The notes beneath the pieces were generated by a model, which saw only the letters and a list, made by a program, of their open reading frames with translations, did no database searches and was not told the origin of the DNA. Below, one piece after another: positions 2,755 through 30,356 of a stretch of 64,000 bases of DNA. The stretch covers positions 62,001-126,000 of IMG/VR virus record IMGVR_UViG_3300042473_001265, one strand, 5' to 3'. Numbering within the stretch: position 1 is the stretch's first letter; each line of letters starts with the position of its first letter. The position numbers were made by a program, and so were the translations under genes.

Positions 2755-2772
2755 ACTGCTACTAAATACAGC

Positions 2773-3678: not shown

Positions 3679-3679
3679 C

Positions 3680-12301: not shown

Positions 12302-12305
12302 AGAT

Positions 12306-13289
12306 ATGAAACTAAGCGAACTCATTGCCTACCGCAATCAACTGCTGGAATATGATGTGGCAGATATACAGTATCATGCTCGACATAAATTGGCCGATGT
12401 TGTGCATACTGTGAAAAACAGTGTGATACAGCCGCGATCTTTCACGCAGTCGATAGAAGAAGATTTAAATAATCTAGTTGACATCTTTAATCAATTTGGA
12501 TTGACACTGGACGAGTTGGTAAAAGAACTGGATTCCTTAATTGAAACTGTTGAAAAGACCTACTATAAAGATAGCACAGCACAGTACAACGAAGAGTCTA
12601 CTAGATACGGTCATTTGTCCGACAGCACCAACGCCCAAGTCAACCAACAAATCATTGACCGTAGTCTAGCAATAAGTCCAGAAACTCAACAGATGCTGTT
12701 GGACAGAATAAAATCTTTTGTAGACTGGAAGTATGCTGGATTGATCATTAGACCGGGAAAAGAAACTTTCATTGATGATTTGGTAGCACTGGATCCATTG
12801 TATCTTGTTGACTACAGTCATGCATTGTTGGCACCAGCTCGGAGTAAATTCAATGCTGAGTATCAAAATAGATTAAGAACATACGAAGAATCTCCGGTCA
12901 CAACTGATGTGCTGGCTGCAATACCAGACAATCAACTGGGACTGTGTCTGGCATTTAATTTCTTTGAATTCACACCGATTGAAGTGGTAGAAAACTATTT
13001 GGAAATTATATTTAAAAAACTAAGACCTGGCGGCACACTGGCCATGACATTCAATGATTGCGATCGTGCTCATTGTGTGGCATTGGTTGAAAAAAACTTC
13101 TGTTTTTATACACCAGGAAGGCGTGTCAAAGCCGCAGCCAAGCGACTCAAATATCAACAGCAGTTTATGTGGACCGACAAGCTGAATCTCACCTGGCTGG
13201 AATTGCGTAAACCTGGAACACTCACTAGTCTAAAAGGCGGACAAACATTGGCAAAAATATTACCCAAACCACTTGCAAAATCTAAATAA
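12306..13289 (+). CDS. class I SAM-dependent methyltransferase-like protein
   Basis: C-terminal FNFFEF...IFKKLRPGGTLAMTF motif; start moved to MKLSE at 12306. Confidence 0.55.
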   Translation: MKLSELIAYRNQLLEYDVADIQYHARHKLADVVHTVKNSVIQPRSFTQSIEEDLNNLVDIFNQFGLTLDELVKELDSLIETVEKTYYKDSTAQYNEESTRYGHLSDSTNAQVNQQIIDRSLAISPETQQMLLDRIKSFVDWKYAGLIIRPGKETFIDDLVALDPLYLVDYSHALLAPARSKFNAEYQNRLRTYEESPVTTDVLAAIPDNQLGLCLAFNFFEFTPIEVVENYLEIIFKKLRPGGTLAMTFNDCDRAHCVALVEKNFCFYTPGRRVKAAAKRLKYQQQFMWTDKLNLTWLELRKPGTLTSLKGGQTLAKILPKPLAKSK

Positions 13290-13322: not shown

Positions 13323-14045
13323 ATGAAAGATCATTTACTAGACCTGGTTCAACACACACTCGATTTGGGTGTAATTGACTTGGTTAAAATCACAGGCGAC
13401 GACAAAGAAACAGTTATTGCTGCGGTGGCAGAAGACCGTTCGGTAGTAGTGGAAGGCAAGTTTGCTGGACCAGTGGCAGATTTTGTTGGTACCTTTGGCA
13501 TGCCAAATTTAAACAAGTTAAAAATCTTGTTGAATCTTCAGGAATACCGCGAGAACGCCAAACTCAGTATCACACGCAAGACCACAGGCGAACCAGATGG
13601 TATTGCATTTGAAAACGCTGCTGGCGACTTTAAAAACAGCTATCGCTTTATGGCCAGTGGCATGGTGAACGACCAGCTCAAGAACTATAAATTTAAAACA
13701 CCAACTTGGCACATTGAGTTTGAACCAACTGTGGCCAGTATCCTGCGTTTGAAAATGCAAGCACAGGCCAACGCCGAAGAAACCAACTTTCAAGCAAAAA
13801 CCGATGGTACCGACTTGATGTTCTTCTTTGGCGATCACAGCACTCACGCTGGAAACTTTGTGTTTCAACCAAACATCACAGGACAGCTCAAACGAGCATG
13901 GTCGTGGCCTATTGTGACATTCATCAGCATTATGAATCTTGCTGGCGACAAGATTGTCCGGATCAGTGATGACGGTGCAGCAATGATCACTGTGGATTCA
14001 GGACTTGCTGTTTATAACTACATTCTTCCAGCACAGAGCAAGTGA
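13323..14045 (+). CDS. putative sliding clamp / processivity factor
   Basis: 240-aa alpha/beta protein of gp45/PCNA-like size in the replication block; assignment rests on context and general pattern. Confidence 0.5.
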   Translation: MKDHLLDLVQHTLDLGVIDLVKITGDDKETVIAAVAEDRSVVVEGKFAGPVADFVGTFGMPNLNKLKILLNLQEYRENAKLSITRKTTGEPDGIAFENAAGDFKNSYRFMASGMVNDQLKNYKFKTPTWHIEFEPTVASILRLKMQAQANAEETNFQAKTDGTDLMFFFGDHSTHAGNFVFQPNITGQLKRAWSWPIVTFISIMNLAGDKIVRISDDGAAMITVDSGLAVYNYILPAQSK

Positions 14046-15604
14046 TGGAACAAGACAATCTAACAGCCAAGCAAAAAGATTACGCCATATTTTTGCCGGC
14101 TATTAGTGGATTCTACGCCACCTTTGTAGGCAAGCAGCGTGATCCAGTAAATGGTCCCTATGTGGAGCCAGGTCGTATGCCCGCAGGTATTCCTGATATG
14201 GAACAACTGAACTGGCTCAACAGCCAGCAAGCATTGTTTCCATATCGGTGGAGTCTGTATTCAGGTGGACACGCCAACTTAGATCTTACCAAACCAGACT
14301 GGTCAGAGGATATGGTTCGTAATCGTGAGCCTGGCACACTCGTGTTAGGCGACTCGGGTGGATTCCAGATTGCCAAAGGTCTGTGGGAAGGCGATTGGAA
14401 AGCCAACTCGGGCTGTGCCAAAGCACAAAAGAAGCGCGAATCTATTCTCAAATGGCTAGACGGTGTTGCCACATACGGCATGACTCTGGATATCCCTACC
14501 TGGGTTATTCATGACAAGAATGCCAGCGACAAGTGCGGTATCAAAACACTGCAAGAAGCAGTTGACGCTACCAAATACAACAACGAATACTTTATGAAAC
14601 ATCGTAAAGGTGTTAAAAATGGTGGCATGAAAGTGTTGAATGTTCTGCAGGGTGCCAGTCATGCCGACGCTGATCGCTGGTACGACCTAATGAAAGACTA
14701 CTGCGATCCTGTCAAGTATCCAGACACTCACTTCAACGGCTGGAGCATGGGCGGACAGAACATGTGTGATGTGCATTTGGTGCTCAAGCGTTTGGTAGCA
14801 TTGCGACATGACAATTTGTTGCAACCAGGTATTCACGATTGGATGCACTTTTTGGGTACCAGCAAGTTGGAATGGGCCGTGCTGCTGACTGTGATTCAGC
14901 GAGCAGTTAGAAAGTATGTGAATCCAGAATTTACCATTTCTTTTGATTGTGCCAGTCCATTCCTGGCCACTGCCAATGGTCAAGTGTATCACGAGATTGT
15001 GCTGCCACACAATGGCAAGTGGAGTTACAGAATGAATCCCATTGCGGATGACAAAAAGTACAGCACAGACACACGCCCGTATGGACAAGCAGTGGTGGCA
15101 GATGGCCTGGTTGATAAATTCGACGAAAGTCCCATCAGCCAACATCTGCAGATGAAAGATATTTGTTATTACAAACCCGGTGACCTAAATAAGATTGGCA
15201 AAGAAGGCAAAACAAGTTGGGACAGTTTCAGCTATGCTTTGTTGATGGGTCATAATGTGTGGTTACATTTGGAATCAGTGCAACGGGCCAACAGAGAATT
15301 TGATGCTGGATCAAGACCCAAAATGATGTGGGACACCAATGGCGATTACACCAAGTTTGAAGACATTGTGGAAGCAATCTTTGCTACACCAGATCGAGCA
15401 GAAGCAGAAGCCATCATTGAACAGTACGATCGTTATTGGATGGACATAGTCGGCACTCGCGGATTCAAAGGCAAGAAGGCCAAAAACGCTCGTTCACAAT
15501 TCAACGCATTGTTCGAAACAGTTGACGACGAGGTCGATGATAATGTACAATCACAACAAGCAATAGACGATCGAATTGCAATTCAAGAAGATTTAGGTTT
15601 ATGA
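14042..15604 (+). CDS. dpdA: tRNA/DNA-guanine transglycosylase superfamily protein (DpdA-like)
   Basis: TGT motifs DSGGFQ, TLDIP, LQG, HFLG, FDCAS and HN; no CxCxxC Zn site; same region as folE, queD and queE. Confidence 0.7.
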   Translation: MMEQDNLTAKQKDYAIFLPAISGFYATFVGKQRDPVNGPYVEPGRMPAGIPDMEQLNWLNSQQALFPYRWSLYSGGHANLDLTKPDWSEDMVRNREPGTLVLGDSGGFQIAKGLWEGDWKANSGCAKAQKKRESILKWLDGVATYGMTLDIPTWVIHDKNASDKCGIKTLQEAVDATKYNNEYFMKHRKGVKNGGMKVLNVLQGASHADADRWYDLMKDYCDPVKYPDTHFNGWSMGGQNMCDVHLVLKRLVALRHDNLLQPGIHDWMHFLGTSKLEWAVLLTVIQRAVRKYVNPEFTISFDCASPFLATANGQVYHEIVLPHNGKWSYRMNPIADDKKYSTDTRPYGQAVVADGLVDKFDESPISQHLQMKDICYYKPGDLNKIGKEGKTSWDSFSYALLMGHNVWLHLESVQRANREFDAGSRPKMMWDTNGDYTKFEDIVEAIFATPDRAEAEAIIEQYDRYWMDIVGTRGFKGKKAKNARSQFNALFETVDDEVDDNVQSQQAIDDRIAIQEDLGL

Positions 15605-16110
15605 TTAGAAAAGATCACGACGATTCGGTAAAGTTCTTTACTGGAACAGAAGTAGAACACACTCCTGCATTGGGAAAGAAAACTCTGTTTGTGGTGGGTG
15701 TGCAGTCAGTGGATGACATTGCTGCACACCTAACAGGCTGCGAACACATCTACTTTGGCGCCAACCAGAGTTTTCCCAACTATGACATCAATGCTCGTGG
15801 TTGGCTAGACTGGGAGAACATGATTGGACCATTCCTAGACCGAGGTTATCTATGCACCCTAGACATAGATGTCAAATCCGTGGAAGGCTTGTTAGAAAGC
15901 GGATTCACCGAACATCACAACTTCATTCCCATGATATCGGTCAAGCTGCCTTACATACGCCAGCTGGGCTACAACGCCACACTCAAACTGGACGACAAAG
16001 ACTTTGCTGCTACCAATCCTGGAGTGTGGTGTCACAGTGTACACAAATTACAAAGTCGCACAGCATTCACTGACTGGGATCAGTACAACAAAGACGAGGT
16101 AGTAAAATGA
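15601..16110 (+). CDS. hypothetical protein coupled to the dpdA-like gene
   Basis: 169 aa; ATGA overlaps with both neighbours. Confidence 0.65.
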   Translation: MIRKDHDDSVKFFTGTEVEHTPALGKKTLFVVGVQSVDDIAAHLTGCEHIYFGANQSFPNYDINARGWLDWENMIGPFLDRGYLCTLDIDVKSVEGLLESGFTEHHNFIPMISVKLPYIRQLGYNATLKLDDKDFAATNPGVWCHSVHKLQSRTAFTDWDQYNKDEVVK

Positions 16111-16397
16111 TTAGATGGTTATGGTCAAGAATGATGAAATGGGGTTGGGATTTCAACCACAATCTACAAGAAAACGATGTAGTCTATGCCCTAGGAAGCA
16201 GAGATGATGATAGTATTGAATTGTCAGACCCATTAACCTTTAGAATACAAACAGTGTTGGGCGGCACCTTGATAGAAACCAGTTATTATCATAGGAAATC
16301 AGAGGATCGTCGCTCTAAATTATATATTGTCACACCAGAAGAAAACTTGTCTGAAAGTGTGGGTAAAATTGTAACCATGGAACTACTACAAAAATGA
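16107..16397 (+). CDS. hypothetical protein
   Basis: 96-aa ORF with coupled start and stop. Confidence 0.55.
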   Translation: MIRWLWSRMMKWGWDFNHNLQENDVVYALGSRDDDSIELSDPLTFRIQTVLGGTLIETSYYHRKSEDRRSKLYIVTPEENLSESVGKIVTMELLQK

Positions 16398-16867
16398 TAC
16401 AAGCACAACGAGAAGCAATAGATCGCATCGTGGAAAAGGCCGAACGCAAAGTCTGGGTCACATTCCAAAAAGAAGGCATACATAAATACCCTGCGGCGCT
16501 GACAGATCCAGCGTTGGCCACAGGAGATGAATATGATGTATCGTTTTTGGGCCATCCTCATCGCCACATCTTTCATTTCAGGGTGTGGATCGATGTGTTC
16601 CATAATGACCGGGACATCGAGTTCATCCAATTCAAACGCTGGCTCGAAAACCTGTTCCGGCCTAAACATACCGACAATAACAATAATACGGATTCCGTTC
16701 TAAGCCTTGACTACAAAAGTTGCGAGATGATCGCAGATGACATATATATACAGATTGCACAGCGATATCCGGACAGAGCTGTGTGGATTGAAGTATCCGA
16801 AGACAATGAAAACGGCTGCTTGATCAAGTATGAACTTTCTCGTCCTAACCTCTCTTTAAAAATTTAA
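16394..16867 (+). CDS. dpdL: QueD-like T-fold protein, DpdL-like (candidate CDG decarboxylase)
   Basis: FLGHPHRHIF matches the LxxxHRHxF signature I recall for DpdL; also has SCE and VSED T-fold motifs. Confidence 0.6.
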   Translation: MIQAQREAIDRIVEKAERKVWVTFQKEGIHKYPAALTDPALATGDEYDVSFLGHPHRHIFHFRVWIDVFHNDRDIEFIQFKRWLENLFRPKHTDNNNNTDSVLSLDYKSCEMIADDIYIQIAQRYPDRAVWIEVSEDNENGCLIKYELSRPNLSLKI

Positions 16868-16906
16868 AAATTTTTAAATCTCATCAACCTTTAAAAAAGA
16901 AACATC

Positions 16907-17128
16907 ATGGCCAAACAACTCGTACAAGCCAACCCCAAGTCTACAGCAGCACTGGAAGAACTAGGAACCTTTCTGGAATTTTGTTGCGATTTTGGATATC
17001 GTTACAATGAAGCAGACCTGTATAACTTCAAAAGTTATGCCTGGCAGCAATACAACAAGTTCACGCAGGGTAAAAACGCTCGTGACATGTGGGCCGAAGA
17101 TGCTCGTAGGTTAAACAGAAATATTTAA
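16907..17128 (+). CDS. hypothetical protein
   Basis: 73-aa ORF with an AAGAAA SD-like leader. Confidence 0.55.
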   Translation: MAKQLVQANPKSTAALEELGTFLEFCCDFGYRYNEADLYNFKSYAWQQYNKFTQGKNARDMWAEDARRLNRNI

Positions 17129-17131
17129 ATC

Positions 17132-17998
17132 TTGGTTACAATATTTTTTGTTCCAGGAATGTTTGGATCAACTGTTGAATTTGTGCTAAGGTCGTATACA
17201 GACAAATTCAACAAGGTCAATGGAGAAGTGTTGTCGGATGGATCTATGCATTCATTTGAAAAAGCGTTTCACCCAACTGATATGGAATCAATAACTCCAA
17301 AATCTGTGGTAGATATATCCACCCCAATATATCCATTTAAAAAACAACATTTTCCTGAAATACTACAAGCGTTTTTGAACAATAAGCTCATACACAACAC
17401 AATAATACTACATGCTGATTCCTTACGAGCAGCCGAACTTAATATTTTATTTCAATATCACAAAATAGCGTTTGGTGAAAAACTAAACCTCGGCCTTGAT
17501 ATTTTTTGTTACAATAATACTCATGACATTGTAAACTGGAATCAAAATTATACTCACTGGGACCAAATGCAGTCATGGGAGTTGCGAGAATGGTTTAGTT
17601 TGTTTTATGTTCCATGGGTGCAGGAATGGATTGAGTCACAACATCAAGCGCCCGATACATATTTAAAAGTGTGCAATACTGATATACTGTATGATACTAA
17701 GAATACTTTCAAACGCATTTTTAAATTTCTTAATTTAACACCGACCGGCGATCTTGATTTGTTTATTGCTGATTGGACAAAAAAACAGCAATACATTGTA
17801 GACGAGTTTGACTTGTTAGATCGTATAGTTGATTGCTCTATTAATAATCAACCACTGGAGTGGCAACCCATTAACCTCATAGCAGAAGCTATTGTGCAAC
17901 AGAGACTACGAGCAGTTGGTTACGAAATACGGTGTGATGGACTAGATACGTTTCCAACAGATTCCAGAACACTTTACAACTTATTGGAGAAATGCTAA
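17132..17998 (+). CDS. hypothetical protein, weak sulfotransferase-like N-terminus
   Basis: 288-aa AT-rich ORF beginning with a beta strand and PGMFGST; start codon uncertain. Confidence 0.5.
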   Translation: MVTIFFVPGMFGSTVEFVLRSYTDKFNKVNGEVLSDGSMHSFEKAFHPTDMESITPKSVVDISTPIYPFKKQHFPEILQAFLNNKLIHNTIILHADSLRAAELNILFQYHKIAFGEKLNLGLDIFCYNNTHDIVNWNQNYTHWDQMQSWELREWFSLFYVPWVQEWIESQHQAPDTYLKVCNTDILYDTKNTFKRIFKFLNLTPTGDLDLFIADWTKKQQYIVDEFDLLDRIVDCSINNQPLEWQPINLIAEAIVQQRLRAVGYEIRCDGLDTFPTDSRTLYNLLEKC

Positions 17999-17999
17999 C

Positions 18000-18401
18000 A
18001 TGGGTGCAAGCAGAGAAAAAGATTTGGCAGACTTTGACCTTGAGCGTTTTGTTGACATGTTCGACGAAGCTATGACCAGTCAAGATCCGCGTGTGATGGA
18101 TGCGCTGCGCGGTCTCATGATGATAGTGCTACTGACTCGTCCTGAAATCAAAACAGAACACAGTCGCAACCATGGACCTCTGAGAAGATTGTTCGAAGAC
18201 ATGAATCATCTAAATAGACGTATGCATGACATGGAAGACAAAGTCAATAACATGGGTCGATCTAGTGATTCGGCTGAAAAATATGCATACACCCATTATC
18301 CTGACAAAAAGTATGCCATGACTGCTACACAGGCAATGGCCGCGCAAATTGATCGAGATGTATTGAACCGAGTACAAGGACTAAATGAACGAGAAGATTA
18401 A
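18000..18401 (+). CDS. hypothetical coiled-coil protein
   Basis: 133-aa ORF. Confidence 0.55.
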   Translation: MGASREKDLADFDLERFVDMFDEAMTSQDPRVMDALRGLMMIVLLTRPEIKTEHSRNHGPLRRLFEDMNHLNRRMHDMEDKVNNMGRSSDSAEKYAYTHYPDKKYAMTATQAMAAQIDRDVLNRVQGLNERED

Positions 18402-18672
18402 ACAATTTGCCGAACAGGCTAAAAAATATGCTCTTGATGCTATGATTAAAATCACAGACCGAGAACAAGCATTGAAAGTGTATTCGGAATCTTATGATAC
18501 AAAGTTCGCCGAGTTGATTGTGACGGAATGCTTGCGGCAGGTTGAAGAACAATACAAACCTGTGTTGGAAGATGAAGTCATGATGAAGGACACGCATTGG
18601 GGTGGATATGTCCAATGCGGTGTTGATAGTTATGTGGCCATTAGAGAACATTTTTTTGGAGTTGAAGAATGA
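18385..18672 (+). CDS. small phage protein of the MNE.I.E.A...KFAELIV..C...FGVEE family
   Basis: Paralogous to the ORFs at 59816 and 59989. Confidence 0.65.
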   Translation: MNEKIKQFAEQAKKYALDAMIKITDREQALKVYSESYDTKFAELIVTECLRQVEEQYKPVLEDEVMMKDTHWGGYVQCGVDSYVAIREHFFGVEE

Positions 18673-19871
18673 GAAAACTATTTTATTGTGGTTTGGAGTC
18701 GTATGAAGCAAGGTACACTCTACAACTGACTGAATGGAACCGTCGTGTGTTCGATCGTAGAGGGTTGGATGTAGTTTATGTTCCAGGCAGCACCATTGAC
18801 AACACACAAAGTATCAGCGTGGGACAGGTGTTGGATGCACACGGCCGCAGTTACTTTGGCATGAGCCAAATGATGAATCTTGTGCAAATGATGCGCCGAG
18901 GAGAAGTCACAAGTGAAGATGTGATCTACTTTGAAGACATGTTTCAGCCCGGTATCGAGAGCTTGCCTTATATTCTTGATCAAGTGGATGCGGATCAGCG
19001 TCCTAGGATCTATGTTCGCTGTCTTGCTCAGGCCATTGATCCTGATGATTTTGTTCATGTATGGGGCATGGAAAAGTGGATGGGCCTGTATGAAAAAATG
19101 GTCAATGAGTTTGTGACAGGTGTGCTTGCTACCAACGAAGAAATGGTTGCTCACATGCGTATTGCAGGCTGGACTGCTCCTATCTACAACATCTCAGGCT
19201 TGGCGTTCGGCAAGGCAGAAGTACTGGAACGCATCGGCGGTGCGGAAAAAGTCCGACCATTTGAAGAACGCCCTCGTCGAGTGGGTTTTGCAGCTAGGTT
19301 TGATCAAGAAAAACAACCGGGCTTCTTCATGGATCTGATTGAGATGTACGGTGAACTCACCACGGAGCCTTGTGAGTTTGCCATCTACTCCGGCGGTGCA
19401 TTGCGCAGCAACAATCCTGAATTTGTGACCCGTGCTAGAGCCATGGAAGCAGCCGGCAAGTTAAAAATCTATGACAACATAAGCAAGAATGAATATTATG
19501 ATCATCTCAATGACACTCGTGTATTGTTCAATTGTGCTTTACAGGACTGGGTTAGCAACACCGTCTCGGAAGCTGACACTCTTGGAGCTAATGTGCTCTA
19601 TCCTGCTTATCGTAGCTTTCCTGAAACTTTTGCAAACGATCCTAATCGACTTTATGTTCCCTGGAGCATAGATGATGCTTATCACAAGATGCAAAACTTG
19701 CTGCGTGAACCACATCACAACATGGGCTTGATCAGCGACTGGAACAACGGCACAGTTGATCGTGTGGTTGATATCATTGAAGGCCGCGGCGAACAATGGA
19801 ATCGTGCAGGCAATCGATATCGTGATCATGTGGCACAAGACAAATATCATGTGAGAAAGATCGAATCATGA
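18669..19871 (+). CDS. GT-B fold glycosyltransferase (GT4-like)
   Basis: C-terminal VGFAARFDQEKQPGFF and LFNCALQDWVSNTVSEADTLGANVLYP pattern. Confidence 0.75.
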   Translation: MRKLFYCGLESYEARYTLQLTEWNRRVFDRRGLDVVYVPGSTIDNTQSISVGQVLDAHGRSYFGMSQMMNLVQMMRRGEVTSEDVIYFEDMFQPGIESLPYILDQVDADQRPRIYVRCLAQAIDPDDFVHVWGMEKWMGLYEKMVNEFVTGVLATNEEMVAHMRIAGWTAPIYNISGLAFGKAEVLERIGGAEKVRPFEERPRRVGFAARFDQEKQPGFFMDLIEMYGELTTEPCEFAIYSGGALRSNNPEFVTRARAMEAAGKLKIYDNISKNEYYDHLNDTRVLFNCALQDWVSNTVSEADTLGANVLYPAYRSFPETFANDPNRLYVPWSIDDAYHKMQNLLREPHHNMGLISDWNNGTVDRVVDIIEGRGEQWNRAGNRYRDHVAQDKYHVRKIES

Positions 19872-20827
19872 GCACTGTTGTAGTAACAGGTGCTGCTGGT
19901 TACATTGGTGGCGAAATTGCCCTGTTGTTGAAAGATGCAGGGCACACTGTGGTTGGTATTGATCGCAGACCCTTGTCAAGTCATCTCAAAGACGTTATGG
20001 ACTTTGTACAAGCAGACTTTGACAGCGACGACTCTTATCGCAAGTTGATTTCTGTACGGCCCGCAGCCATTGTACACTGTGCAGGCACCAGCTTGGTTGG
20101 CCCTAGCATTCTGCGTCCCAGTGATTACTACAACAACAATGTGGTCAAGACTCTCAACCTGCTGAACATTGTTATGGCTGCAATGCCGCAAACCAGATTT
20201 ATCTTTAGCAGCAGTGCAGCAGTGTACGGTGACCCTGTTATGACTCCGTGTGATGAAGTTGATCCAAAGGAACCCATAAGTCCCTATGGTCAAAGCAAAC
20301 TGATGGTGGAACAGATCCTGGAAAGTTATCACCGTGCATATGGTCTAGACTATGTGGCATTTCGCTATTTCAATGCGTGTGGCGCAGACAGCCAAGGCCG
20401 GCACGGTCAAGAGCCCGGGGCAACACACATCATTGCTCGAGTGCTGGAAAGCATTCGGGACCGTACAGAATTTGTGCTCAACGGCATTGATTACCCCACT
20501 CCCGACGGAACCTGTGTACGAGACTATGTGCATGTGGAAGATATTGCCCGAGCACACGTCATGGCGCTGGATTCAAAAGTCACAGCAGGCGTATACAATC
20601 TTGGATCCAACAACGGAACCAGCAACAGAGAAATCATTGATACAGCACAACAGGTCACTGGCAGTGCTGCGGTCGTTCAACTTAGTCAGGCACGACCAGG
20701 CGATCCACCCGTACTTACTGCCAGTGCTGCCAAGTTTGGAATGGCTGTGGACGGCGCATGGCAAAAACATACTTTGCATGACATGATTTCGCATGCATGG
20801 ACCTGGTACAATCGATCCCATGTTTGA
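19868..20827 (+). CDS. galE: UDP-glucose 4-epimerase
   Basis: VVTGAAGYIG Rossmann motif, FSSSAAVYG, YGQSK catalytic YxxxK, FRYFNACG and RDYVHV. Confidence 0.9.
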   Translation: MSTVVVTGAAGYIGGEIALLLKDAGHTVVGIDRRPLSSHLKDVMDFVQADFDSDDSYRKLISVRPAAIVHCAGTSLVGPSILRPSDYYNNNVVKTLNLLNIVMAAMPQTRFIFSSSAAVYGDPVMTPCDEVDPKEPISPYGQSKLMVEQILESYHRAYGLDYVAFRYFNACGADSQGRHGQEPGATHIIARVLESIRDRTEFVLNGIDYPTPDGTCVRDYVHVEDIARAHVMALDSKVTAGVYNLGSNNGTSNREIIDTAQQVTGSAAVVQLSQARPGDPPVLTASAAKFGMAVDGAWQKHTLHDMISHAWTWYNRSHV

Positions 20828-21407
20828 TAAGATTCTAAAATTTGAACATGCGCTGGCAGAGTTCACCGGCGCACCTTATGTGATCATGACCGATTGCTGC
20901 ACACATGCCATCGAACTTTGTCTACGCTATGACCGGATACGAAGCTGTAGTTTTACAGCATTTACCTATCTGAGTGTGGCCATGACCATGCACAAACTGG
21001 GCATCAAGTACGGCCTGGAAAACGAAGTCTGGACCGGTGAGTATCACATTCATGACACTCGAATCTGGGACAGTGCTAGACGACTGGAAAAGAACATGTA
21101 TCGACCTGGTGCCATGCAGTGCTTGAGTTTTGGACACGGTAAACCCCTGCATATTGGTCGTGGTGGTGCCATCTTGTTGGATGATCCAGCAGCATACGAG
21201 ATCATGATTCGTCAACGCTATGATGGACGCGACCTAAATACATCACCCTGGCAAGCACAACACACATTTCAAGTTGGATATCACTACAAGCCCACGCCCG
21301 AAGAAGCTGTTCAAGGTCTGGCCATGTTGGAAGGAATCAAGGACCAAGGCTGTGTGCCTGTGCATGTCGCTTACCCAGACCTAAGAACTATTACCATAGT
21401 AGATTGA
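20820..21407 (+). CDS. short DegT/DnrJ/EryC1/StrS-like PLP-dependent protein
   Basis: FEHALAEFTGA..CTHAIEL and SFGHGKPLHIGRGG with the PLP lysine; only about 195 aa. Confidence 0.65.
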   Translation: MFDKILKFEHALAEFTGAPYVIMTDCCTHAIELCLRYDRIRSCSFTAFTYLSVAMTMHKLGIKYGLENEVWTGEYHIHDTRIWDSARRLEKNMYRPGAMQCLSFGHGKPLHIGRGGAILLDDPAAYEIMIRQRYDGRDLNTSPWQAQHTFQVGYHYKPTPEEAVQGLAMLEGIKDQGCVPVHVAYPDLRTITIVD

Positions 21408-21432
21408 CTTTGCAGTCTAAATACTATACAAT
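21404..21432 (+). promoter_or_regulatory. sigma70-type promoter for folE
   Basis: TTGACT-N17-TATAAT. Confidence 0.65.
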
Positions 21433-21472
21433 CAACAAAAGCAATCCACTGCGTCAACATCGGAGAAAAAGT

Positions 21473-22171
21473 ATGGACACAAGTAAAAATTTAGCACAGG
21501 TGCTTCGCGAACGAATGCAAGCCGACAACAAGCGTTTCTGGGCTGGTGATAACATCAGCGAGTATGTTAAAGATGAGTTTGACAAGAACTATCTTATTGA
21601 AGAGGCAACTGTAGCGTTTGAGGGTGTACTCGATGCACTGTTAATTGATCGTGAGAATGATCCTAATAGCAAAGGTACAGCACGCCGCCTTGCTAAAATG
21701 TACTTCAATGAAATTATGGCAGGTAGATATGAACCAGCACCAGATGCAACCGCTTTCCCAAATGATTCGGCAGACCGTTACGAAGGTATGTTGGTGGTTA
21801 GAAGTGAGCTTCGTAGTATGTGTAGTCATCATCATCAGCCTGTGTCCGGTGTGGCTTATATCGGAATCATTGCTGCTCAAAAACTTATTGGTCTTAGCAA
21901 GTACACTCGCATTGCTCAGTGGTGTGCCCGTCGCGGTACATTACAGGAAGAACTCTGCAATGACATTGCACGAGAAATCTCCAAAGCAACTGAAAGCGAC
22001 AATGTAGCAGTGTATCTTGAAGCGGAACATGGCTGCTGCACCAATAGAGGAATAATGGCGCACAGTAGTCTGACACAGACCACAGTGCTCAAAGGTGCAT
22101 TCAAGGACGACAAAGGAACAAAGAAGGAATTCTTTGACAATATCTTGCTTCAGTCAAGAAACGGTAATTAA
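21473..22171 (+). CDS. folE: GTP cyclohydrolase I
   Basis: SMCSHHHQP, GLSKYTR, QEEL, HGCC..RG and TKKEF motifs; ATG at 21473 with GGAG SD. Confidence 0.95.
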   Translation: MDTSKNLAQVLRERMQADNKRFWAGDNISEYVKDEFDKNYLIEEATVAFEGVLDALLIDRENDPNSKGTARRLAKMYFNEIMAGRYEPAPDATAFPNDSADRYEGMLVVRSELRSMCSHHHQPVSGVAYIGIIAAQKLIGLSKYTRIAQWCARRGTLQEELCNDIAREISKATESDNVAVYLEAEHGCCTNRGIMAHSSLTQTTVLKGAFKDDKGTKKEFFDNILLQSRNGN

Positions 22172-22187
22172 ATTAAAGGAAAATAAT

Positions 22188-22715
22188 ATGACACAAACTG
22201 TACCCAATGTAAAATTTGCATTTCGCGAAGGCGACGAAGCTCCCGAAGATGGCGGTTGCCCGATCGGCGGAGAATTTGTTTTTAAAACAAGCACGGATTT
22301 GTTTGCCAACAAACAAGTGATTGTCTTTAGTCTGCCCGGAGCATTTACTCCCACTTGCAGCACATACCAACTGCCGGGCTTTGAACAAAAGTTTGAAGAA
22401 TTTCGAGCCAAAGGCATTGATGAGATTTATTGCATCAGTGTCAACGATGCCTTTGTAATGAACGAATGGGCTCGATCGCTGGGTATTAAAAATATCAAAG
22501 TCGTCCCAGACGGCGCCGGTACTTTTACCGACGGAATGGGCATGACAGTTGACATGAGTGAGATTGGATTTGGCCTGCGCAGTCGTCGTTATGCGGCAGT
22601 GATCAACAACTGCAAAGTAGAAAAAATGTTTGTGGAACCCGACTCCAGTGCCGCAGATCCAGATCCTTACGGTGTTTCTAGCCCCGAGAGTGTGATGAAG
22701 TACATCGACCAATGA
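22188..22715 (+). CDS. peroxiredoxin (Prx5 type)
   Basis: [20 protein letters not shown] and RSRRYA motifs. Confidence 0.9.
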
Positions 22716-23038
22716 CCTATGTTGTAACCGAAGAATGTATTCTTTGCAAACACACTGACTGTGTTGCGGTGTGTCCGGTAGATTGTTTTGTGGAAGGTCC
22801 AAACTTTCTAGCAATCGACCCGGATGGATGTATCGACTGTGCAGTGTGTGTGCCCGAGTGTCCAGTCAATGCTATCTATGCCGAGGATGATGTTCCGGCA
22901 CACTTACAAGCATTTGTGGATATCAATGCAGAATTGGCAAAAAAATGGTCGCCTATAACCAAACGAAAAGATCCACTGCCAGACCATGAAAAATGGACAA
23001 ATGTTCCCAATAAATTAGAACATTTGGATCGCAGTTGA
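22712..23038 (+). CDS. fdxA: 7Fe ferredoxin (FdxA-like)
   Basis: [18 protein letters not shown] and [12 protein letters not shown] motifs. Confidence 0.9.
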
Positions 23039-23095
23039 CTATAAAATATTCTTTTGTTATAATGAATACTTAACCAACCATATAGGAGGTCCGCA

Positions 23096-25309
23096 ATGAC
23101 CAAAGTATTGAAATTTTTTGCAATTGCCGTGATGGCAATGACCATGGGGCTGGCAGTAGCAGCTGATGTAGTTCGCTATGCGTATATCACTGCCATGGTA
23201 AAACAACCCAATGGCACGGTGATTAACCAACAATGGAAATACACCTACATCAACAACAAGCTTCGAGCCAAGGACCTAATCAGTGCCACAACAGTTGGCG
23301 CCGTGGCATCTGTTGCGCGGCCTGTAACCCCAACTGTGACTCCAGCGGTGACTCCAGCGGTGATCCCAACTGTGCCCAGGCTAGTGTTTGATGCCAATTT
23401 CAACGCGGCCACCTACTACAACAACCCCAACATGGGCACGCCTACAGCAGTGCCCAGTTTTGACCCCAGCTGGTATTTGACCAGTGAGGCTGGCAAAACA
23501 ATCTCAGCCACGGGTGCCAACTATGCCTATGCTCGTGGCTGGACTGGCAAGGGCTCGACCATTATGGTGATGGACACTGGCATTGCTGTGGCTGGCAGTG
23601 AGTTTGCTGGAAAAATCAAATACAGCGTGGACTACACACAGACCAGCATATTGGACACAGTGGGTCACGGCAGCCAGGTGGCAGCCATTGCGGCCGCTGC
23701 TCGTGACGGCAAAGGCATGCATGGTGTGGCCTACGATGCCAATCTGGCCATTGCCAAGATTGGCACGGGTAATAGCGTCAGCATGGCATCAGCTCGTCAA
23801 GCACTGGTGTGGGCACAGCAGTACACAGACATTGTGGTGGCTAACTTGAGTTCCAATGTGAACTATGCCGCTGACTACACCAGATCTGTTTACAGGTTGG
23901 CTGACGGTACTTTTTACAGCAACCATGTCAACTACGGTGGCACCAACTACTACAACTTGGAACGACCAACTGATTGGTCTGCGGTGTTGGGCAAGCAAAT
24001 GGTGCTGGTTGTGGCCGCAGGCAATCAAGGCCTAGGCTATGTGCAGTCGCCTGCGGTGTTTGCGTCTGCTGTGGGCCGAGACGGCCGACTAGTGATGAAT
24101 GGGCAGATGATTATTGCAGGTGGCTGGAACACCACCACCAACTCAGTGGAGGGCAACGGTGCAGGACACATTTGCAAAGTGTCAGTGAATCAGGTGTGTC
24201 AAGACAGTTATCGCACCAAAGACTTCTTCTTGATGGCGCCCAGTGTGGCCATTGAAACTGTGGGTGCAGACGGTGCATATCGAACCAGCAGCGGCACCAG
24301 TTTTGCTGCACCTGCCATATCTGGTGCAGTGGCTGTGGTTCATCAGTTGTGGCCCTACATGAAGGGTGATCAGCTGGCTCAGCTGCTGTTTAAAACTGCC
24401 AATAAAAACATAAAAAACTACAACGCAGATCAAATGGGCCATGGGCTGTTGGATCTCAACAGGGCCACACAGCCAGTGGGGTCGCTGGGCGTTTCAGTCA
24501 CAGGTCGAACAGGCACAGCGCGGCCACTCAGCGGCGGTTTGGCCATTGCTGGTGTGATGGATGCATCAGTGTCCAGCATGCTGTCGGCTGTGTCGGCTGT
24601 TGACAGCTTTGAACGAGACTTCACAGTGAACCTGTCATCTGCTGCTGGCAGCACTGTGCAGCCTGTGGAACACATGCAGCAGACTGCGGGACAAAGTTGG
24701 AGCAGTAAATTTGCAGGTCCTTCAGTCACAGCCCGAGGTGTGACCATCAGTGGCACGGGTGCCAACATCAGTGTGGGAGTCAGCAGCCAAGCATTTGATC
24801 TTCATCGGCAAGCCTTGCAGTATCAAGCCACAGTCACACAAGTGGCACACAATCCTTGGGTCAACTTCTCTGGCATGTGGGGACAAAGTGCAGGCTCCAC
24901 CACTGCTGAATTCAGCATGTTGTACAGCCCAGACGCTTCGGGTGCATGGGCACAGGCAGGTGTTATGAACACTGCGGGCCAATACCAGTACGCCATGGTC
25001 AATCGCGTGTCTGACATTCGCAGTGCCTATGCTGTAGCAGGGTGGAGGAACAACAGTGTGAACTTGTATGCTGGCTTCAAGCCTACTGTGACCAGTGGCT
25101 CAGTCAACTTGACAGTTCCCACCAGTGTTGATGCTGATGGAGTCATGCACTACAGCAACGCAACCAATCAGATCCGTAACCAACGCACTGGTTTTGTTGG
25201 CGCCAGTGTTGACTATGCACCTGTGCGCAATCACAGCCTAAATTTATCAACAACATATGGCCAAGATGGCACAGGCCAAATTGGTTTGAAATACAAGATT
25301 GCTTTATAA
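23096..25309 (+). CDS. secreted S8 (subtilisin-like) peptidase with a C-terminal beta-rich, autotransporter-like domain
   Basis: Signal peptide; catalytic triad motifs MDTG, GHGSQVA and GTSFAAP; beta-strand-rich C-terminus. Confidence 0.85.
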   Translation: MTKVLKFFAIAVMAMTMGLAVAADVVRYAYITAMVKQPNGTVINQQWKYTYINNKLRAKDLISATTVGAVASVARPVTPTVTPAVTPAVIPTVPRLVFDANFNAATYYNNPNMGTPTAVPSFDPSWYLTSEAGKTISATGANYAYARGWTGKGSTIMVMDTGIAVAGSEFAGKIKYSVDYTQTSILDTVGHGSQVAAIAAAARDGKGMHGVAYDANLAIAKIGTGNSVSMASARQALVWAQQYTDIVVANLSSNVNYAADYTRSVYRLADGTFYSNHVNYGGTNYYNLERPTDWSAVLGKQMVLVVAAGNQGLGYVQSPAVFASAVGRDGRLVMNGQMIIAGGWNTTTNSVEGNGAGHICKVSVNQVCQDSYRTKDFFLMAPSVAIETVGADGAYRTSSGTSFAAPAISGAVAVVHQLWPYMKGDQLAQLLFKTANKNIKNYNADQMGHGLLDLNRATQPVGSLGVSVTGRTGTARPLSGGLAIAGVMDASVSSMLSAVSAVDSFERDFTVNLSSAAGSTVQPVEHMQQTAGQSWSSKFAGPSVTARGVTISGTGANISVGVSSQAFDLHRQALQYQATVTQVAHNPWVNFSGMWGQSAGSTTAEFSMLYSPDASGAWAQAGVMNTAGQYQYAMVNRVSDIRSAYAVAGWRNNSVNLYAGFKPTVTSGSVNLTVPTSVDADGVMHYSNATNQIRNQRTGFVGASVDYAPVRNHSLNLSTTYGQDGTGQIGLKYKIAL

Positions 25310-25776: not shown

Positions 25777-26328
25777 ATGGCAAACTCATCAGTGGACTTA
25801 ATCCGTCATTTAGAAGAAAACTTACAAAACACTAGACCAGTGAACTATAGGTACACCAGCACCAAAGAGTATCACGACTCTTTTCCCTGCGCCTATCGAC
25901 AATGGCGTGCTGACAGTCACTGTAATCTAATACACGGCTACAGCTTCAACATGAAGTTTTACTTTGGTACCAATGATCTGGATGCTCGCAACTGGGCTGC
26001 TGATTATGGAGGTCTCAAAGAACTCAAAGGTATATTGGAAAGTCAATTTGATCACACTTTATTGGTGGCCGAGGACGATCCTGAACTGGCGTTTTACAAA
26101 GAAATGGAACGCCGCAAGTTGGCCAAACTGACTATTCTGCCCAAACTAGGCTGCGAAGGTCTGGCTGACCAGCTGTACAAATATGTCAATGGTGTTTACA
26201 TTCCAGACATGTGGGGTCAGGCAGAATCCAAACGCTTGTGGTGCTATCGTGTGGAAGTGCGTGAAACACAAGCCAACATGGCGTTCCGTGAAGGACATCG
26301 TGAGTGGAATGAAGATTTATTTGAATAA
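25777..26328 (+). CDS. queD: 6-carboxy-5,6,7,8-tetrahydropterin synthase
   Basis: HCNLIHGYS, FDHTLL, GCEGLA and VEVRET motifs. Confidence 0.85.
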   Translation: MANSSVDLIRHLEENLQNTRPVNYRYTSTKEYHDSFPCAYRQWRADSHCNLIHGYSFNMKFYFGTNDLDARNWAADYGGLKELKGILESQFDHTLLVAEDDPELAFYKEMERRKLAKLTILPKLGCEGLADQLYKYVNGVYIPDMWGQAESKRLWCYRVEVRETQANMAFREGHREWNEDLFE

Positions 26329-27158: not shown

Positions 27159-27160
27159 TC

Positions 27161-27940: not shown

Positions 27941-27943
27941 TAA

Positions 27944-28354: not shown

Positions 28355-28367
28355 ATGTAACACACCA

Positions 28368-29480: not shown

Positions 29481-30356
29481 ATGTTCGGAACAAACGAAAT
29501 CATTGGCAAGAAGTACTTTAAAGACGCACAAGAAAACACCTTGATGGTGACCAGTATGTTCTTTACCTTACAAGGTGAAGGACCCTATGCTGGCTTGCCA
29601 GCACTGTTTATTCGACTGGCCAAATGCAACTTGGATTGCAGTTTCTGTGACACATTCTTTGATGACGGTGATGTGTTCACCTATGCAGAACTGGAACAAA
29701 AGGCACATGAAACTATTCGCGACTTTTGGGTCAGCAAAGGCAAACCAGTGCCTGAGTGGGCAGTGCGGGATCGCAACGACTATCCCGGAGTTGTTCTGGT
29801 AATGACTGGCGGCGAACCCTTGCTGCAAGACAACATCTCGGGATGGATGAAACGACAGTTGTTGCACTACAAAGCAGTGCAGGTTGAAAGCAACGGCATA
29901 CCTGACACAGATGTGCCTACTGGTGTCACACTGGTGTGTTCGCCCAAATGCATTGAGAAGAATGGCAAGGCTGTCAAGTATCTTGCACCCAGTAAAACTA
30001 TTTTAGACCGTGCAGACTGTTTGAAGTTTGTTGTAACTGCCGATGCGGAATCACCTTACAACACAGTTCCAGACTGGGCATTTGAATGGAAACAGCGCAA
30101 CCCCAACAAGGAAGTTTACTGTAGCCCAATGAACGTCTACAACAGTTTTCCACAGAAGATCAAATTGTTGCGAGCAGAGAAAGGCCAAATAACCATGGCT
30201 GAACGCAGCACTGTGGATGAAGTGATTAGTTTTTGGGAACCAGGGCTGTTGAACTTGGCTGACAACCAACGCAATCATGAATATGTGGGGCAGTTTTGTA
30301 TAGAGAATGGGTTCAAGTTGAACTTGCAGCAGCATCTATACACAAGTTTGGCATAA
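29481..30356 (+). CDS. queE: 7-carboxy-7-deazaguanine synthase (radical SAM)
   Basis: FFTLQGEGPYAG, FIRLAKCNLDCSFCDT, TGGEPLLQ, VESNG, SPK and LNLQQH motifs. Confidence 0.92.
   Translation: MFGTNEIIGKKYFKDAQENTLMVTSMFFTLQGEGPYAGLPALFIRLAKCNLDCSFCDTFFDDGDVFTYAELEQKAHETIRDFWVSKGKPVPEWAVRDRNDYPGVVLVMTGGEPLLQDNISGWMKRQLLHYKAVQVESNGIPDTDVPTGVTLVCSPKCIEKNGKAVKYLAPSKTILDRADCLKFVVTADAESPYNTVPDWAFEWKQRNPNKEVYCSPMNVYNSFPQKIKLLRAEKGQITMAERSTVDEVISFWEPGLLNLADNQRNHEYVGQFCIENGFKLNLQQHLYTSLA

What the first reader, a model, noticed from the sequence alone, without database searches (positions are those of the whole stretch)
15601..21407. Glycosyltransferase, GalE and PLP enzyme embedded between dpdA/dpdL and folE: possible sugar-hypermodified deazaguanine
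Seen: an unknown 169-aa gene coupled to dpdA, then a GT-B glycosyltransferase, a UDP-sugar epimerase and a DegT-like enzyme in overlapping-frame succession just before folE. Established: T-even phages glycosylate modified bases with GT-B enzymes. Inference: an undescribed glycosylated or amino-sugar 7-deazaguanine. These genes could instead glycosylate virion proteins.
Basis: inference. Interest (0 to 1): 0.6.

Follow-up and report, generated by a model that had tools for sequence, protein, structure and literature searches.

The report
Glycosyltransferase built into deazaguanine DNA-modification cassette
A jumbo phage carries a sugar-transferring enzyme that, here and in more than 150 other phage loci, sits inside the gene set that replaces guanine in DNA with 7-deazaguanine, which suggests an undescribed sugar-decorated form of this modified base.

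Summary
The window is part of a 340-kb phage genome. The genes run DpdA-like transglycosylase, 169-aa protein, 96-aa ORF, DpdL, a variable insert, 400-aa protein, GalE, half-size DegT-like protein and FolE. QueD and QueE lie further on. Most junctions are ATGA/TTGA overlaps.

The 400-aa protein has no Pfam hit of its own. Its model (pLDDT 94.5) is a GT-B/GT4-like glycosyltransferase, and 50 of 72 relatives hit PF00534.

The main result is the co-occurrence. In 80 diverse viral loci, DpdL lies within 1.2 kb of the GT in 71. A DpdA-type gene lies directly downstream in about 61. The same cassette occurs in ACP17, PA5oct, Phosso, X1/BUDD, BCSR5 and BUCT-ZZ01. Six DpdL lineages lack the GT, among them phiST, whose DNA holds plain dDG. 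So the GT needs DpdL, but DpdL does not need the GT, as expected of a tailoring step.

GalE and the mini-DegT are specific to this jumbo lineage and probably supply the donor sugar.

A glycosylated deazaguanine in DNA is the best reading (about 0.5). It is inferred, and the acceptor atom is unknown. I found no published description.

The parts
14042..15604 (+). DpdA-like DNA transglycosylase (520 aa, long form)
   Evidence: It has DSGGFQ (D104), LDIP (D150) and SFDCASP (D302) motifs. hhalign against the DpdA3 set gives 95%, E 3.6e-8. Its family HMM hits TGT-positive ORFs. It has no direct Pfam hit.
15601..16110 (+). 169-aa protein of unknown fold, translationally coupled to dpdA
   Evidence: It joins dpdA by an ATGA overlap. 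It is present in 70 related loci. Homologs lie just upstream of ACP17 DpdA3 and just upstream of the GT in L102 and L103. The model has pLDDT 79 and no significant fold match.
16107..16397 (+). 96-aa ORF, poorly conserved
   Evidence: It is found in only 9 related loci at 80% coverage or more.
16394..16867 (+). DpdL (QueD paralog, proposed CDG decarboxylase)
   Evidence: It carries the motif LGHPHRHIF, which fits LxxxHRHxF (PMC10516641). It hits phrog_17812. It is 54% identical to the DpdL of ACP17 and 33% to that of phiST, the two phages named in PMC10516641.
16907..17128 (+). 73-aa conserved small protein, function unknown
   Evidence: It is present in 79 of 80 related loci.
17132..18672 (+). 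Variable low-GC insert (288-aa, 133-aa and 95-aa ORFs); probably not core
   Evidence: The ORFs are present in only 3-13 of 80 related loci, and GC is 0.39. There are no family or PDB hits.
18669..19871 (+). GT-B (GT4-like) glycosyltransferase, DpdL-associated family
   Evidence: The AF2 model has pLDDT 94.5. Foldseek matches GT4 enzymes at E about 1e-12. Of 72 relatives, 50 hit PF00534. R210, K215 and E301 are conserved and align to GT4 donor-binding residues.
19868..20827 (+). UDP-glucose 4-epimerase (GalE)
   Evidence: It scores 294.5 bits on TIGR01179, above the cut-off, and E 6e-57 on PF01370. The GxxGxxG and YxxxK motifs are present. It is in 75 related loci but only 2 of 80 diverse GT loci.
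20793..21407 (+). Half-size DegT/DnrJ/EryC1-like PLP protein (204 aa)
   Evidence: It scores 53.7 bits on PF01041. A family profile hits sugar aminotransferases in two segments. Lys117 and Asp93 are invariant, and the short length is conserved.
21404..22171 (+). GTP cyclohydrolase I (FolE)
   Evidence: PF01227 at E 3.5e-39 and NF006824.
25777..26328 (+). QueD (CPH4 synthase)
   Evidence: PF01242 and phrog_2389.
29481..30356 (+). QueE (CDG synthase, radical SAM)
   Evidence: It is 43% identical to ACP17 QueE at E 2.5e-83 and has a CNLDCSFC motif. The Radical_SAM hit is weak.

Best explanation
**What the locus is.** It is a 'type II' DpdL-type 7-deazaguanine DNA-modification cassette with a built-in glycosyltransferase.

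**Proposed pathway.**
- FolE, QueD and QueE make 7-carboxy-7-deazaguanine from GTP (established pathway).
- The genome has no QueC, so DpdL is expected to convert this to 7-deazaguanine, as proposed for phiST.
- The long DpdA exchanges genomic guanine for the deazapurine.
- The 400-aa GT4-like GT-B enzyme then uses an NDP-hexose to put a sugar on the deazaguanine, either on the free base before insertion or on the base in DNA. The result would be sugar-decorated deazaguanine in virion DNA.
- In this jumbo-phage lineage, GalE and a half-size DegT-like PLP protein sit between the GT and folE. They most likely tune the donor pool towards UDP-galactose or a derived sugar.

**Shown:** the folds and families, the conserved donor-binding residues and the cassette architecture across many lineages.

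**Inferred:** that the acceptor is the deazapurine, that the product ends up in DNA, the identity of the sugar and the atom it is attached to.
For: **The GT is a likely active glycosyltransferase.**
- It has the GT-B/GT4 fold.
- The R-x4-K and Glu donor-binding residues are conserved.

**The deazaguanine enzymes are present.**
- DpdA-like, DpdL, FolE, QueD and QueE are all encoded.
- No QueC is found in the genome.

**The GT is embedded next to DpdL and DpdA in cultured phages.** This holds in ACP17 (between dpdA3 and dpdL), PA5oct, Phosso, X1/BUDD, BCSR5 and BUCT-ZZ01.

**The same holds in uncultured sequences.**
- In 71 of 80 diverse viral loci, DpdL is within 1.2 kb of the GT. A TGT-positive or DSGAHS-motif DpdA is directly downstream in about 61 of the 80.
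- In 7 of 8 metagenomic representatives, DpdL is next to the GT.

**The dependence is asymmetric.** Six DpdL lineages, including phiST with plain dDG, have no GT in the whole record, and the positive controls worked.

**Published context.**
- ACP17 dpdA plus dpdL, without the GT gene that lies between them, gave no dDG in E. coli, and the authors suggested a missing enzyme (PMC10516641).
- PA5oct DNA resists restriction enzymes with G in their sites (PMC12191111).
- Phage DNA GTs paired with, and dependent on, a neighbouring epimerase are established for 5hmC (10.1101/2023.12.21.572611).
- A GT that glycosylates N2 of a free 7-deazapurine is known (HuiG; PMC7439116).

**No pyrimidine acceptor route is seen.** There is no thymidylate-synthase-like gene that could make a hydroxymethyl-pyrimidine acceptor.
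Against: - No nucleoside or mass data exist for any GT-bearing phage.
- 7-deazaguanine has no hydroxyl, so the linkage would have to be an N- or C-glycoside or sit on an unknown intermediate. That is unprecedented for a GT4-like enzyme acting on DNA.
- The GT is acidic (pI 5.2; N-domain 4.9), unlike a typical DNA-binding GT.
- T4 alpha- and beta-GT are not among its top structural matches.
- These phages assemble readily from ordinary metagenomes, so the modification does not block library polymerases.
- GalE and mini-DegT are absent from nearly all other GT-bearing cassettes, so they are not part of the core chemistry.
- DpdL's decarboxylase activity is itself unproven (PMC10516641).
Confidence: 0.5

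Rival explanations
1. The GT acts on a soluble deazapurine or pterin intermediate and the final DNA base carries no sugar. Two versions are possible. The glycosylated compound may be a transient or carrier form needed to make or deliver 7-deazaguanine, leaving plain dDG in DNA. Or it may be a separate small-molecule product.
For: - The GT is acidic.
- Its best structural relatives are small-molecule GT4 enzymes such as BshA, MshA, SPS and the tetrahydrobiopterin glucosyltransferase.
- HuiG acts on a free 7-deazapurine base (PMC7439116).
- ACP17 dpdA plus dpdL alone gave no dDG (PMC10516641), which fits the GT being needed upstream of insertion.
- The invariant acidic and aromatic residues of the N-domain (E10, R15, Y16, D56, D90, D124, D127, W137) suit a heterocycle pocket.
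Against: - phiST-type phages make dDG without any GT (PMC10516641), so a GT is not generally needed for dDG.
- The GT gene overlaps the DpdA gene in most loci, which points to a DNA-directed end product.
- No hydrolase that would remove the sugar again is recognisably conserved.
Confidence: 0.22
2. The GT, GalE and the DegT-like protein glycosylate a protein (virion, DpdA or host) or a cell-envelope glycan. On this view they sit next to the deazaguanine genes only because both are early or auxiliary genes.
For: - GT4 enzymes commonly build glycans.
- GalE and DegT-like genes are typical of polysaccharide loci.
- A second PHROG 'glycosyltransferase' (26337-27158) and methyltransferases lie nearby.
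Against: - The GT is adjacent to DpdL and DpdA in more than 150 loci from unrelated phage families with otherwise different gene content.
- The GT is almost never found without DpdL.
- PF00534 finds no ordinary GT4-type gene anywhere in the genome, so this search shows no glycan locus elsewhere.
Confidence: 0.1
3. The GT glycosylates a different DNA base, for example a hydroxymethylated pyrimidine as in T-even phages, in parallel with an independent deazaguanine modification.
For: - All characterised phage DNA glycosyltransferases act on 5hmC, 5hmU or 5-hydroxycytosine (10.1101/2023.12.21.572611; PMC13326640).
- GT-epimerase pairs are typical of those systems.
Against: - The genome has no thymidylate-synthase or dCMP-hydroxymethylase homolog.
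- It has no Tet/JBP match, although that search had no working positive control.
- The GT tracks DpdL rather than any pyrimidine-modifying gene.
Confidence: 0.05

Closest known systems
DpdL/DpdA3-type dDG system of Cellulophaga phage phiST (Cui, Hutinet et al. 2023, PMC10516641)
   Same: It has FolE, QueD and QueE, no QueC, a DpdL with the LxxxHRHxF motif, and a divergent TGT-like DpdA next to the replication genes.
   Different: phiST has no GT anywhere in its record. Its DpdA3 is short (259 aa), against 520 aa here. The present cassette adds the GT, the 169-aa family and, in this lineage, GalE and a mini-DegT. phiST's product is plain dDG; the product here is unknown.
Acidovorax phage ACP17 and Pseudomonas jumbo phage PA5oct deazaguanine clusters
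   Same: They have the same cassette, with the GT-family gene between DpdA and DpdL. ACP17 also has the 169-aa family. The BFVD model of the ACP17 GT matches at TM 0.72/0.83.
   Different: The GT is only 23-24% identical to PA5oct's. There is no GalE or mini-DegT, although PA5oct has a 172-aa fragment like the GalE N-terminus. In the papers read here, the GT was not linked to the modification.
Phage DNA glycosyltransferases on hydroxymethyl-pyrimidines (T4 alpha/beta-GT; 5mYOX-associated GT-A/GT-B with partner epimerases, 10.1101/2023.12.21.572611)
   Same: A phage GT-B enzyme is encoded beside base-modification genes. A neighbouring sugar epimerase is likely to supply the donor.
   Different: The acceptor there is a hydroxymethyl group on a pyrimidine, and no such base can be made here. 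This GT is GT4-like and acidic, and T4 GTs are not among its top structural matches.
HuiG of the huimycin pathway and the dapiramicin N-glycosides (PMC7439116; 10.64898/2026.04.15.718813)
   Same: A glycosyltransferase is encoded with the FolE/QueD/QueE genes and glycosylates a 7-deazaguanine-type base at the exocyclic N2 with a UDP-sugar.
   Different: That is an actinomycete secondary-metabolite cluster with QueC, an O6-methyltransferase and no DpdA, and its product is a free compound, not DNA. Homology between HuiG and this GT was not tested.

Membership tests
GT-B fold, GT4-like (Pfam Glycos_transf_1, PF00534) glycosyltransferases | Two Rossmann-like domains with an inter-domain cleft (GT-B fold) | tested here: met
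   The AF2 model has pLDDT 94.5 and pTM 0.92. Foldseek matches glycogen synthase, BshA, MshA, PimA and SPS at E about 1e-12.
GT-B fold, GT4-like (Pfam Glycos_transf_1, PF00534) glycosyltransferases | Significant match to the family profile | tested here: inconclusive
   The window protein has no Pfam hit. Of 72 relatives, 50 hit PF00534, with best E 4.5e-10. The family profile hits PglH (WlaC) at E 3e-4.
GT-B fold, GT4-like (Pfam Glycos_transf_1, PF00534) glycosyltransferases | Conserved NDP-sugar binding residues (R-x4-K and the first Glu of EX7E) in the C-terminal domain | tested here: met
   R210 and K215 are invariant and E301 is conserved in 90% or more. They align to GRLDxxK of PglH and to LEAMA of GlgM. 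The second Glu of EX7E is absent.
GT-B fold, GT4-like (Pfam Glycos_transf_1, PF00534) glycosyltransferases | Glycosyl transfer activity | not testable with these tools
   This needs an enzyme assay.
DpdA / TGT-superfamily DNA transglycosylase (520-aa protein) | Catalytic Asp motifs (DSGGFQ-type and FDC/DS-type) and the substrate Asp | tested here: met
   D104, D150 and D302 are invariant within DSGGFQ, LDIP and SFDCASP.
DpdA / TGT-superfamily DNA transglycosylase (520-aa protein) | Profile match to TGT or DpdA | tested here: inconclusive
   There is no direct Pfam, NCBIfam or PDB hit. hhalign against the DpdA3 set gives 95%, E 3.6e-8. The link is transitive, through about 420-aa ORFs that pass the PF01702 cut-off. 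Its structure was not predicted.
DpdL (Cui et al. 2023) | QueD/PTPS-like T-fold protein with LxxxHRHxF in place of CxxxHGH | tested here: met
   The motif is LGHPHRHIF. HRH is conserved in at least 98% of 69 homologs. The protein is homologous to the DpdL genes of phiST and ACP17.
DpdL (Cui et al. 2023) | Genome context: FolE, QueD, QueE and DpdA present, QueC absent | tested here: met
UDP-glucose 4-epimerase (GalE) | Score above the equivalog cut-off, NAD-binding GxxGxxG and the catalytic YxxxK | tested here: met
   TIGR01179 scores 294.5 bits against a cut-off of 262.3. The motifs GAAGYIGG and YGQSK are present.
DegT/DnrJ/EryC1 sugar aminotransferases | Full-length fold-type I PLP enzyme (about 360-390 aa) with a large and a small domain | tested here: not met
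   The protein is 204 aa. It matches only profile positions about 31-93 and 163-259, and the C-terminal domain is absent. The short length is conserved in relatives.
DegT/DnrJ/EryC1 sugar aminotransferases | Schiff-base Lys and the Asp that binds the pyridine nitrogen | tested here: met
   K117 (SFGHGK) and D93 (WDSAR) are invariant.
T-even-type DNA glucosyltransferases (T4 alpha/beta-GT) | A hydroxymethyl-pyrimidine acceptor made by a phage TS-like hydroxymethylase | tested here: not met
   The genome has no PF00303 match, and the positive controls worked.
T-even-type DNA glucosyltransferases (T4 alpha/beta-GT) | Specific structural similarity to T4 GTs | tested here: not met
   They are not among the top 50 PDB or BFVD matches.

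The most novel reading that the evidence does not exclude
DpdL-type cassettes with this GT produce a glycosylated 7-deazaguanine in phage DNA, which would be the first sugar-modified purine analogue in any genome. The sugar would be attached as an N2-glycoside, or as a C7/C8 C-glycoside made possible by DpdL's decarboxylation. In this jumbo lineage the sugar would be a galactose-configured or amino hexose made by GalE and the mini-DegT. The family is widespread: at least 761 clusters at 50% identity, present in PA5oct-like therapeutic-candidate phages and in abundant aquatic jumbo phages.
Probability: 0.4. Interest if true: 0.9.

Novelty: new variant of a known kind. Interest (0 to 1): 0.74.

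Why it matters
Known DNA glycosylation in viruses is confined to hydroxylated pyrimidines. Known deazaguanine DNA bases carry only small C7 groups. A glycosyltransferase that is a near-obligate companion of DpdL and DpdA would join the two fields and predicts a new class of DNA base.

It also offers a concrete explanation for a published negative result. ACP17 dpdA plus dpdL gave no dDG in E. coli, and the untested GT gene lies between those two genes.

The question can be tested directly in cultured phages: ACP17, PA5oct, X1, BCSR5 and BUCT-ZZ01. PA5oct-like phages are studied for therapy and are already known to be sensed by modification-dependent END nucleases. The chemistry of their guanine modification therefore bears on host range and defence evasion.

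The GT family is very large in metagenomes, so any new base would be common in the environment.

Tried and rejected
- **Direct family scans of the 400-aa, 520-aa, 169-aa and 288-aa proteins.** Pfam, PHROGs, NCBIfam and PDB sequence searches gave nothing.
- **Megablast of the region against 50,697 phage records.** No match.
- **Profile of the DpdA family against PDB sequences.** No hit. The DpdA assignment rests on motifs, hhalign and transitive hits.
- **The 169-aa protein.** The atlas feature search gave only scores of 0.81 or less. Foldseek found nothing significant. VIA-align gave Z of 6.6 or less, with STAS-like and QueE-like partial barrels inside the noise range. I assign no fold.
- **My guess that the 288-aa protein is a sulfotransferase.** It was not supported: no PDB hit, and hhalign against the L101 sulfotransferase gave 0.4%.
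- **The 273-aa PHROG 'glycosyltransferase' (26337-27158).** No Pfam or PDB support.
- **Complex prediction for DpdA plus GT.** No verdict (score 0.00). This is no evidence either way.
- **Tet/JBP search of the genome.** Nothing was found, but the control genomes also gave nothing, so the result is uninformative.
- **A broken DegT gene.** Rejected, because the short length and the catalytic Lys are conserved across 67 loci.
- **The careful IQ-TREE run of the GT family.** It did not finish, and only the quick tree was used, for choosing representatives.

Full report
**Setting**

The window is bases 62001-126000 of a 340,172-bp viral record that CheckV rates 98% complete. The + strand carries an unbroken gene run:

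| Coordinates | Gene |
|---|---|
| 9644-12301 | Family-B DNA polymerase |
| 12255-13289 | 344-aa methyltransferase-like protein |
| 13323-14045 | 240-aa protein; its homolog in Sinorhizobium phage Phosso is annotated as a sliding clamp |
| 14042-15604 | 520-aa protein (DpdA-like) |
| 15601-16110 | 169-aa protein |
| 16107-16397 | 96-aa ORF |
| 16394-16867 | 157-aa protein (DpdL) |
| 16907-17128 | 73-aa protein |
| 17132-18672 | 288-, 133- and 95-aa ORFs |
| 18669-19871 | 400-aa protein (GT) |
| 19868-20827 | GalE |
| 20793-21407 | 204-aa DegT-like protein |
| 21404-22171 | FolE |
| 22095-25701 | Redoxin, ferredoxin, S8 subtilase and HIT |
| 25777-26328 | QueD |
| 26337-29472 | 273-aa PHROG 'glycosyltransferase', 136-aa ORF, two SAM methyltransferases and a DUF2452 protein |
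| 29481-30356 | QueE |

Most junctions in the finding's range are ATGA or TTGA overlaps, so translational coupling is real.

**Checking the named genes**

- **GalE** passes the NCBIfam equivalog cut-off (294.5 bits against 262.3).
- **The DegT-like protein** is real but half-size.
  - It is 204 aa and matches only two segments of the sugar-aminotransferase profile.
  - It is not a broken gene. It is about 195-212 aa in the 14 most divergent of 67 related loci. The Schiff-base Lys117 and Asp93 are invariant.
- **The 157-aa protein is DpdL.**
  - It carries LGHPHRHIF, the LxxxHRHxF signature that Cui, Hutinet et al. use to separate DpdL from QueD (PMC10516641).
  - It is 54% identical to the DpdL of ACP17 and 33% to that of phiST, the two phages named in that paper.
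- **The 520-aa protein is DpdA-like, but only by indirect evidence.**
  - It has no Pfam TGT hit, and none is found anywhere in the genome.
  - Its invariant motifs DSGGFQ, LDIP and SFDCASP match the TGT catalytic and substrate aspartates.
  - hhalign aligns its family to the DpdA3 proteins of ACP17, X1, BUCT-ZZ01, BCSR5 and phiST at 95% probability, E 3.6e-8.
  - An HMM built only from this lineage hits about 420-aa viral ORFs at E 1e-16 to 1e-20. Some of those ORFs pass the Pfam TGT gathering score.
- **The genome lacks QueC**, so the pathway should stop at 7-carboxy-7-deazaguanine and DpdL.

**The 400-aa protein**

- No library recognises the protein itself.
- An exhaustive search found 761 representative clusters at E 0.001 or better.
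- Of 72 aligned members, 50 hit Glycos_transf_1 (PF00534).
- The family profile hits GT4 enzymes in the PDB.
- The AlphaFold model (pLDDT 94.5) matches GT-B/GT4 retaining glycosyltransferases at E about 1e-12. These include glycogen synthase, BshA, MshA, PimA and sucrose-phosphate synthase.
- Invariant R210 and K215 and the conserved E301 align with the GT4 donor-binding residues. A catalytically competent NDP-sugar transferase is therefore likely.
- It is not specifically like the T4 glucosyltransferases, and it is acidic (pI 5.2).

*Cultured phages.* The GT family lies inside the deazaguanine cluster in six lineages:

| Phage | Position of the GT |
|---|---|
| BUCT-ZZ01 | Right after DpdL; 66% identical to this GT |
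| X1 / BUDD | GT-DpdA-DpdL |
| PA5oct group | DpdA-GT-DpdL |
| ACP17 | DpdA3-GT-DpdL |
| Phosso | DpdL-GT |
| BCSR5 | In the cluster, directly upstream of a 446-aa DpdA3-type gene and about 3 kb after DpdL |

Across 50,697 phage records, 18 of 23 GT records also carry DpdL, against 0.013 expected by chance. The records are not independent, but 6 of 7 GT lineages carry DpdL.

*Metagenomic representatives.* Eight were sampled across the family tree. DpdL is next to the GT in seven.

*Diverse IMG/VR loci.* Eighty loci were taken, 34-57% identical to a distant seed.

| Gene | Loci (of 80) |
|---|---|
| DpdL within 1.2 kb of the GT | 71 |
| FolE | 50 |
| QueE | 48 |
| 402-434-aa DpdA directly downstream (full-length cases) | 33 |
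| About 300-aa family directly downstream, with DSGAHS, HGFAMT and YSVDSTSW motifs | 28 |
| GalE | 2 |
| mini-DegT | 0 |

Many of the loci without DpdL have the GT at a contig end. The 33 DpdA ORFs are hit by both DpdA HMMs, and two of the four scanned against Pfam pass the TGT cut-off.

*The reverse direction.* Whole-record searches with working positive controls found no GT in phiST, RHph_I1_18, Ahp1, Bakedbeans, D479 or MA9V-3, all of which carry DpdL. Five of these six carry short DpdA3 proteins of 259-290 aa, or a domain of that size.

*Reading.* The GT almost never occurs without DpdL, while DpdL often occurs without the GT. That is the pattern expected of a tailoring enzyme acting downstream of DpdL.

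**Lineage-specific parts**

- Within the close jumbo-phage lineage (80 loci, GT 80-100% identical), GalE, the mini-DegT and FolE follow the GT almost wherever the contig extends that far.
- In the diverse set, GalE appears in 2 of 80 loci and the mini-DegT in none. They are add-ons of this lineage.
- Their likeliest role is donor-sugar supply. Phage 5hmC glycosyltransferases that depend strictly on an adjacent epimerase are documented (10.1101/2023.12.21.572611).
- The 169-aa family also recurs: just upstream of ACP17 DpdA3, and just upstream of the GT in L102 and L103. Its model matches no known fold convincingly.
- The 288-, 133- and 95-aa ORFs are a variable low-GC insert.

**Mechanism**

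- *Established.* FolE, QueD and QueE make CDG.
- *Proposed in the literature.* DpdL decarboxylates CDG to 7-deazaguanine and a DpdA3-type enzyme installs it. phiST DNA is fully dDG (PMC10516641).
- *Inferred here.* The GT transfers a hexose to the deazapurine, before or after insertion.
- *The acceptor atom is the main gap.* 7-deazaguanine has no hydroxyl. The exocyclic N2 has precedent in huimycin and dapiramicin, where HuiG glycosylates a free 7-deazapurine (PMC7439116; 10.64898/2026.04.15.718813). A C-glycoside on the pyrrole ring freed by decarboxylation is conceivable but has no precedent.
- *Published results that fit the GT being a functional part of the pathway.*
  - ACP17 dpdA plus dpdL gave no dDG in E. 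coli, and the authors suspected missing enzymes (PMC10516641). The GT gene lies between those two genes.
  - PA5oct DNA resists restriction enzymes with G in their sites, and its modification has not been identified by MS (PMC12191111).
- *No pyrimidine acceptor route.* There is no thymidylate-synthase-like gene that could provide a hydroxymethyl-pyrimidine acceptor.

**Rivals**

- The GT may act on a soluble intermediate, leaving plain dDG in DNA. Its acidity and its small-molecule GT4 relatives favour this. GT-less phiST making dDG argues against a general requirement.
- Protein or envelope glycosylation is hard to square with the cassette architecture across unrelated phages.
- Glycosylation of another base lacks the required enzymes.

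**Novelty**

Full-text searches found no report of a glycosyltransferase tied to DpdL or DpdA, and none of a glycosylated deazaguanine in DNA. The library is not exhaustive.

I rate this a new variant of a known kind. It is a Dpd-type system with an integral GT. The chemistry of the product is inferred, not shown.

**Steps that gave no result**

- The DpdA-GT complex prediction gave no verdict.

Noticed in passing
whole genome G000 (e.g. C1:139-146 kb, 182-188 kb; window 38145-38570 on the - strand): The 340-kb phage genome has 15 radical-SAM matches, 12 of them above the Pfam cut-off. That is unusually many for a phage.
   Followed up: no
window 22095-25701: A redoxin, a 2x[4Fe-4S] ferredoxin (DUF3470 type), a 737-aa S8 subtilase and a HIT-family protein sit between folE and queD. 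The ferredoxin could serve QueE; the roles of the others are unknown.
   Followed up: no
window 26337-29472: Between queD and queE lie a 273-aa protein that PHROGs calls a glycosyltransferase (no Pfam or PDB support), a 136-aa ORF, a class-I SAM methyltransferase, a DUF2452 protein and a Methyltransf_24 protein. These are possible further tailoring steps.
   Followed up: partly
window 16900-18700: A low-GC (0.39) stretch holds 288-, 133- and 95-aa ORFs that are present in only 3-13 of 80 closely related loci. It is a variable insert inside the cassette.
   Followed up: partly
L009 (Synechococcus phage BUCT-ZZ01) 9001-10167: The GT of this T4-like cyanophage is 66% identical to the jumbo-phage GT, while its DpdL, FolE and QueD are only 32-36% identical. 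This suggests lateral transfer of the GT. The cluster also holds a second weak GT-B gene (447 aa) and a small PRTase.
   Followed up: partly
L101 1240-1890: A Sulfotransfer_2 protein (31 bits, above the cut-off) lies between DpdL and the GT in a metagenomic cassette. This hints at further decoration in some lineages.
   Followed up: no
L188 5251-6402 (Vibrio phage Bakedbeans gp176); L190 5431-6312; L104 2056-2982; P0159: DpdL occurs fused to unknown extra domains in proteins of 383, 293 and 308 aa. One GT is fused to an unknown 296-aa C-terminal domain, giving 655 aa.
   Followed up: partly
L108-L187, ORF directly downstream of the GT: A family of about 300 aa with DSGAHS, HGFAMT and YSVDSTSW motifs follows the GT in 28 loci. 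Pfam TGT does not recognise it. It looks like a classic DpdA-type transglycosylase.
   Followed up: partly
L010 (PA5oct) 2605-7831: The PA5oct DNA polymerase gene is split by a homing-endonuclease gene, whereas the homologous polymerase in this window is intact.
   Followed up: no
window 12255-13289: A 344-aa ORF with a weak methyltransferase-domain match overlaps the end of the polymerase gene by 47 nt. It is conserved but fast-evolving in the lineage (31-75% identity).
   Followed up: no
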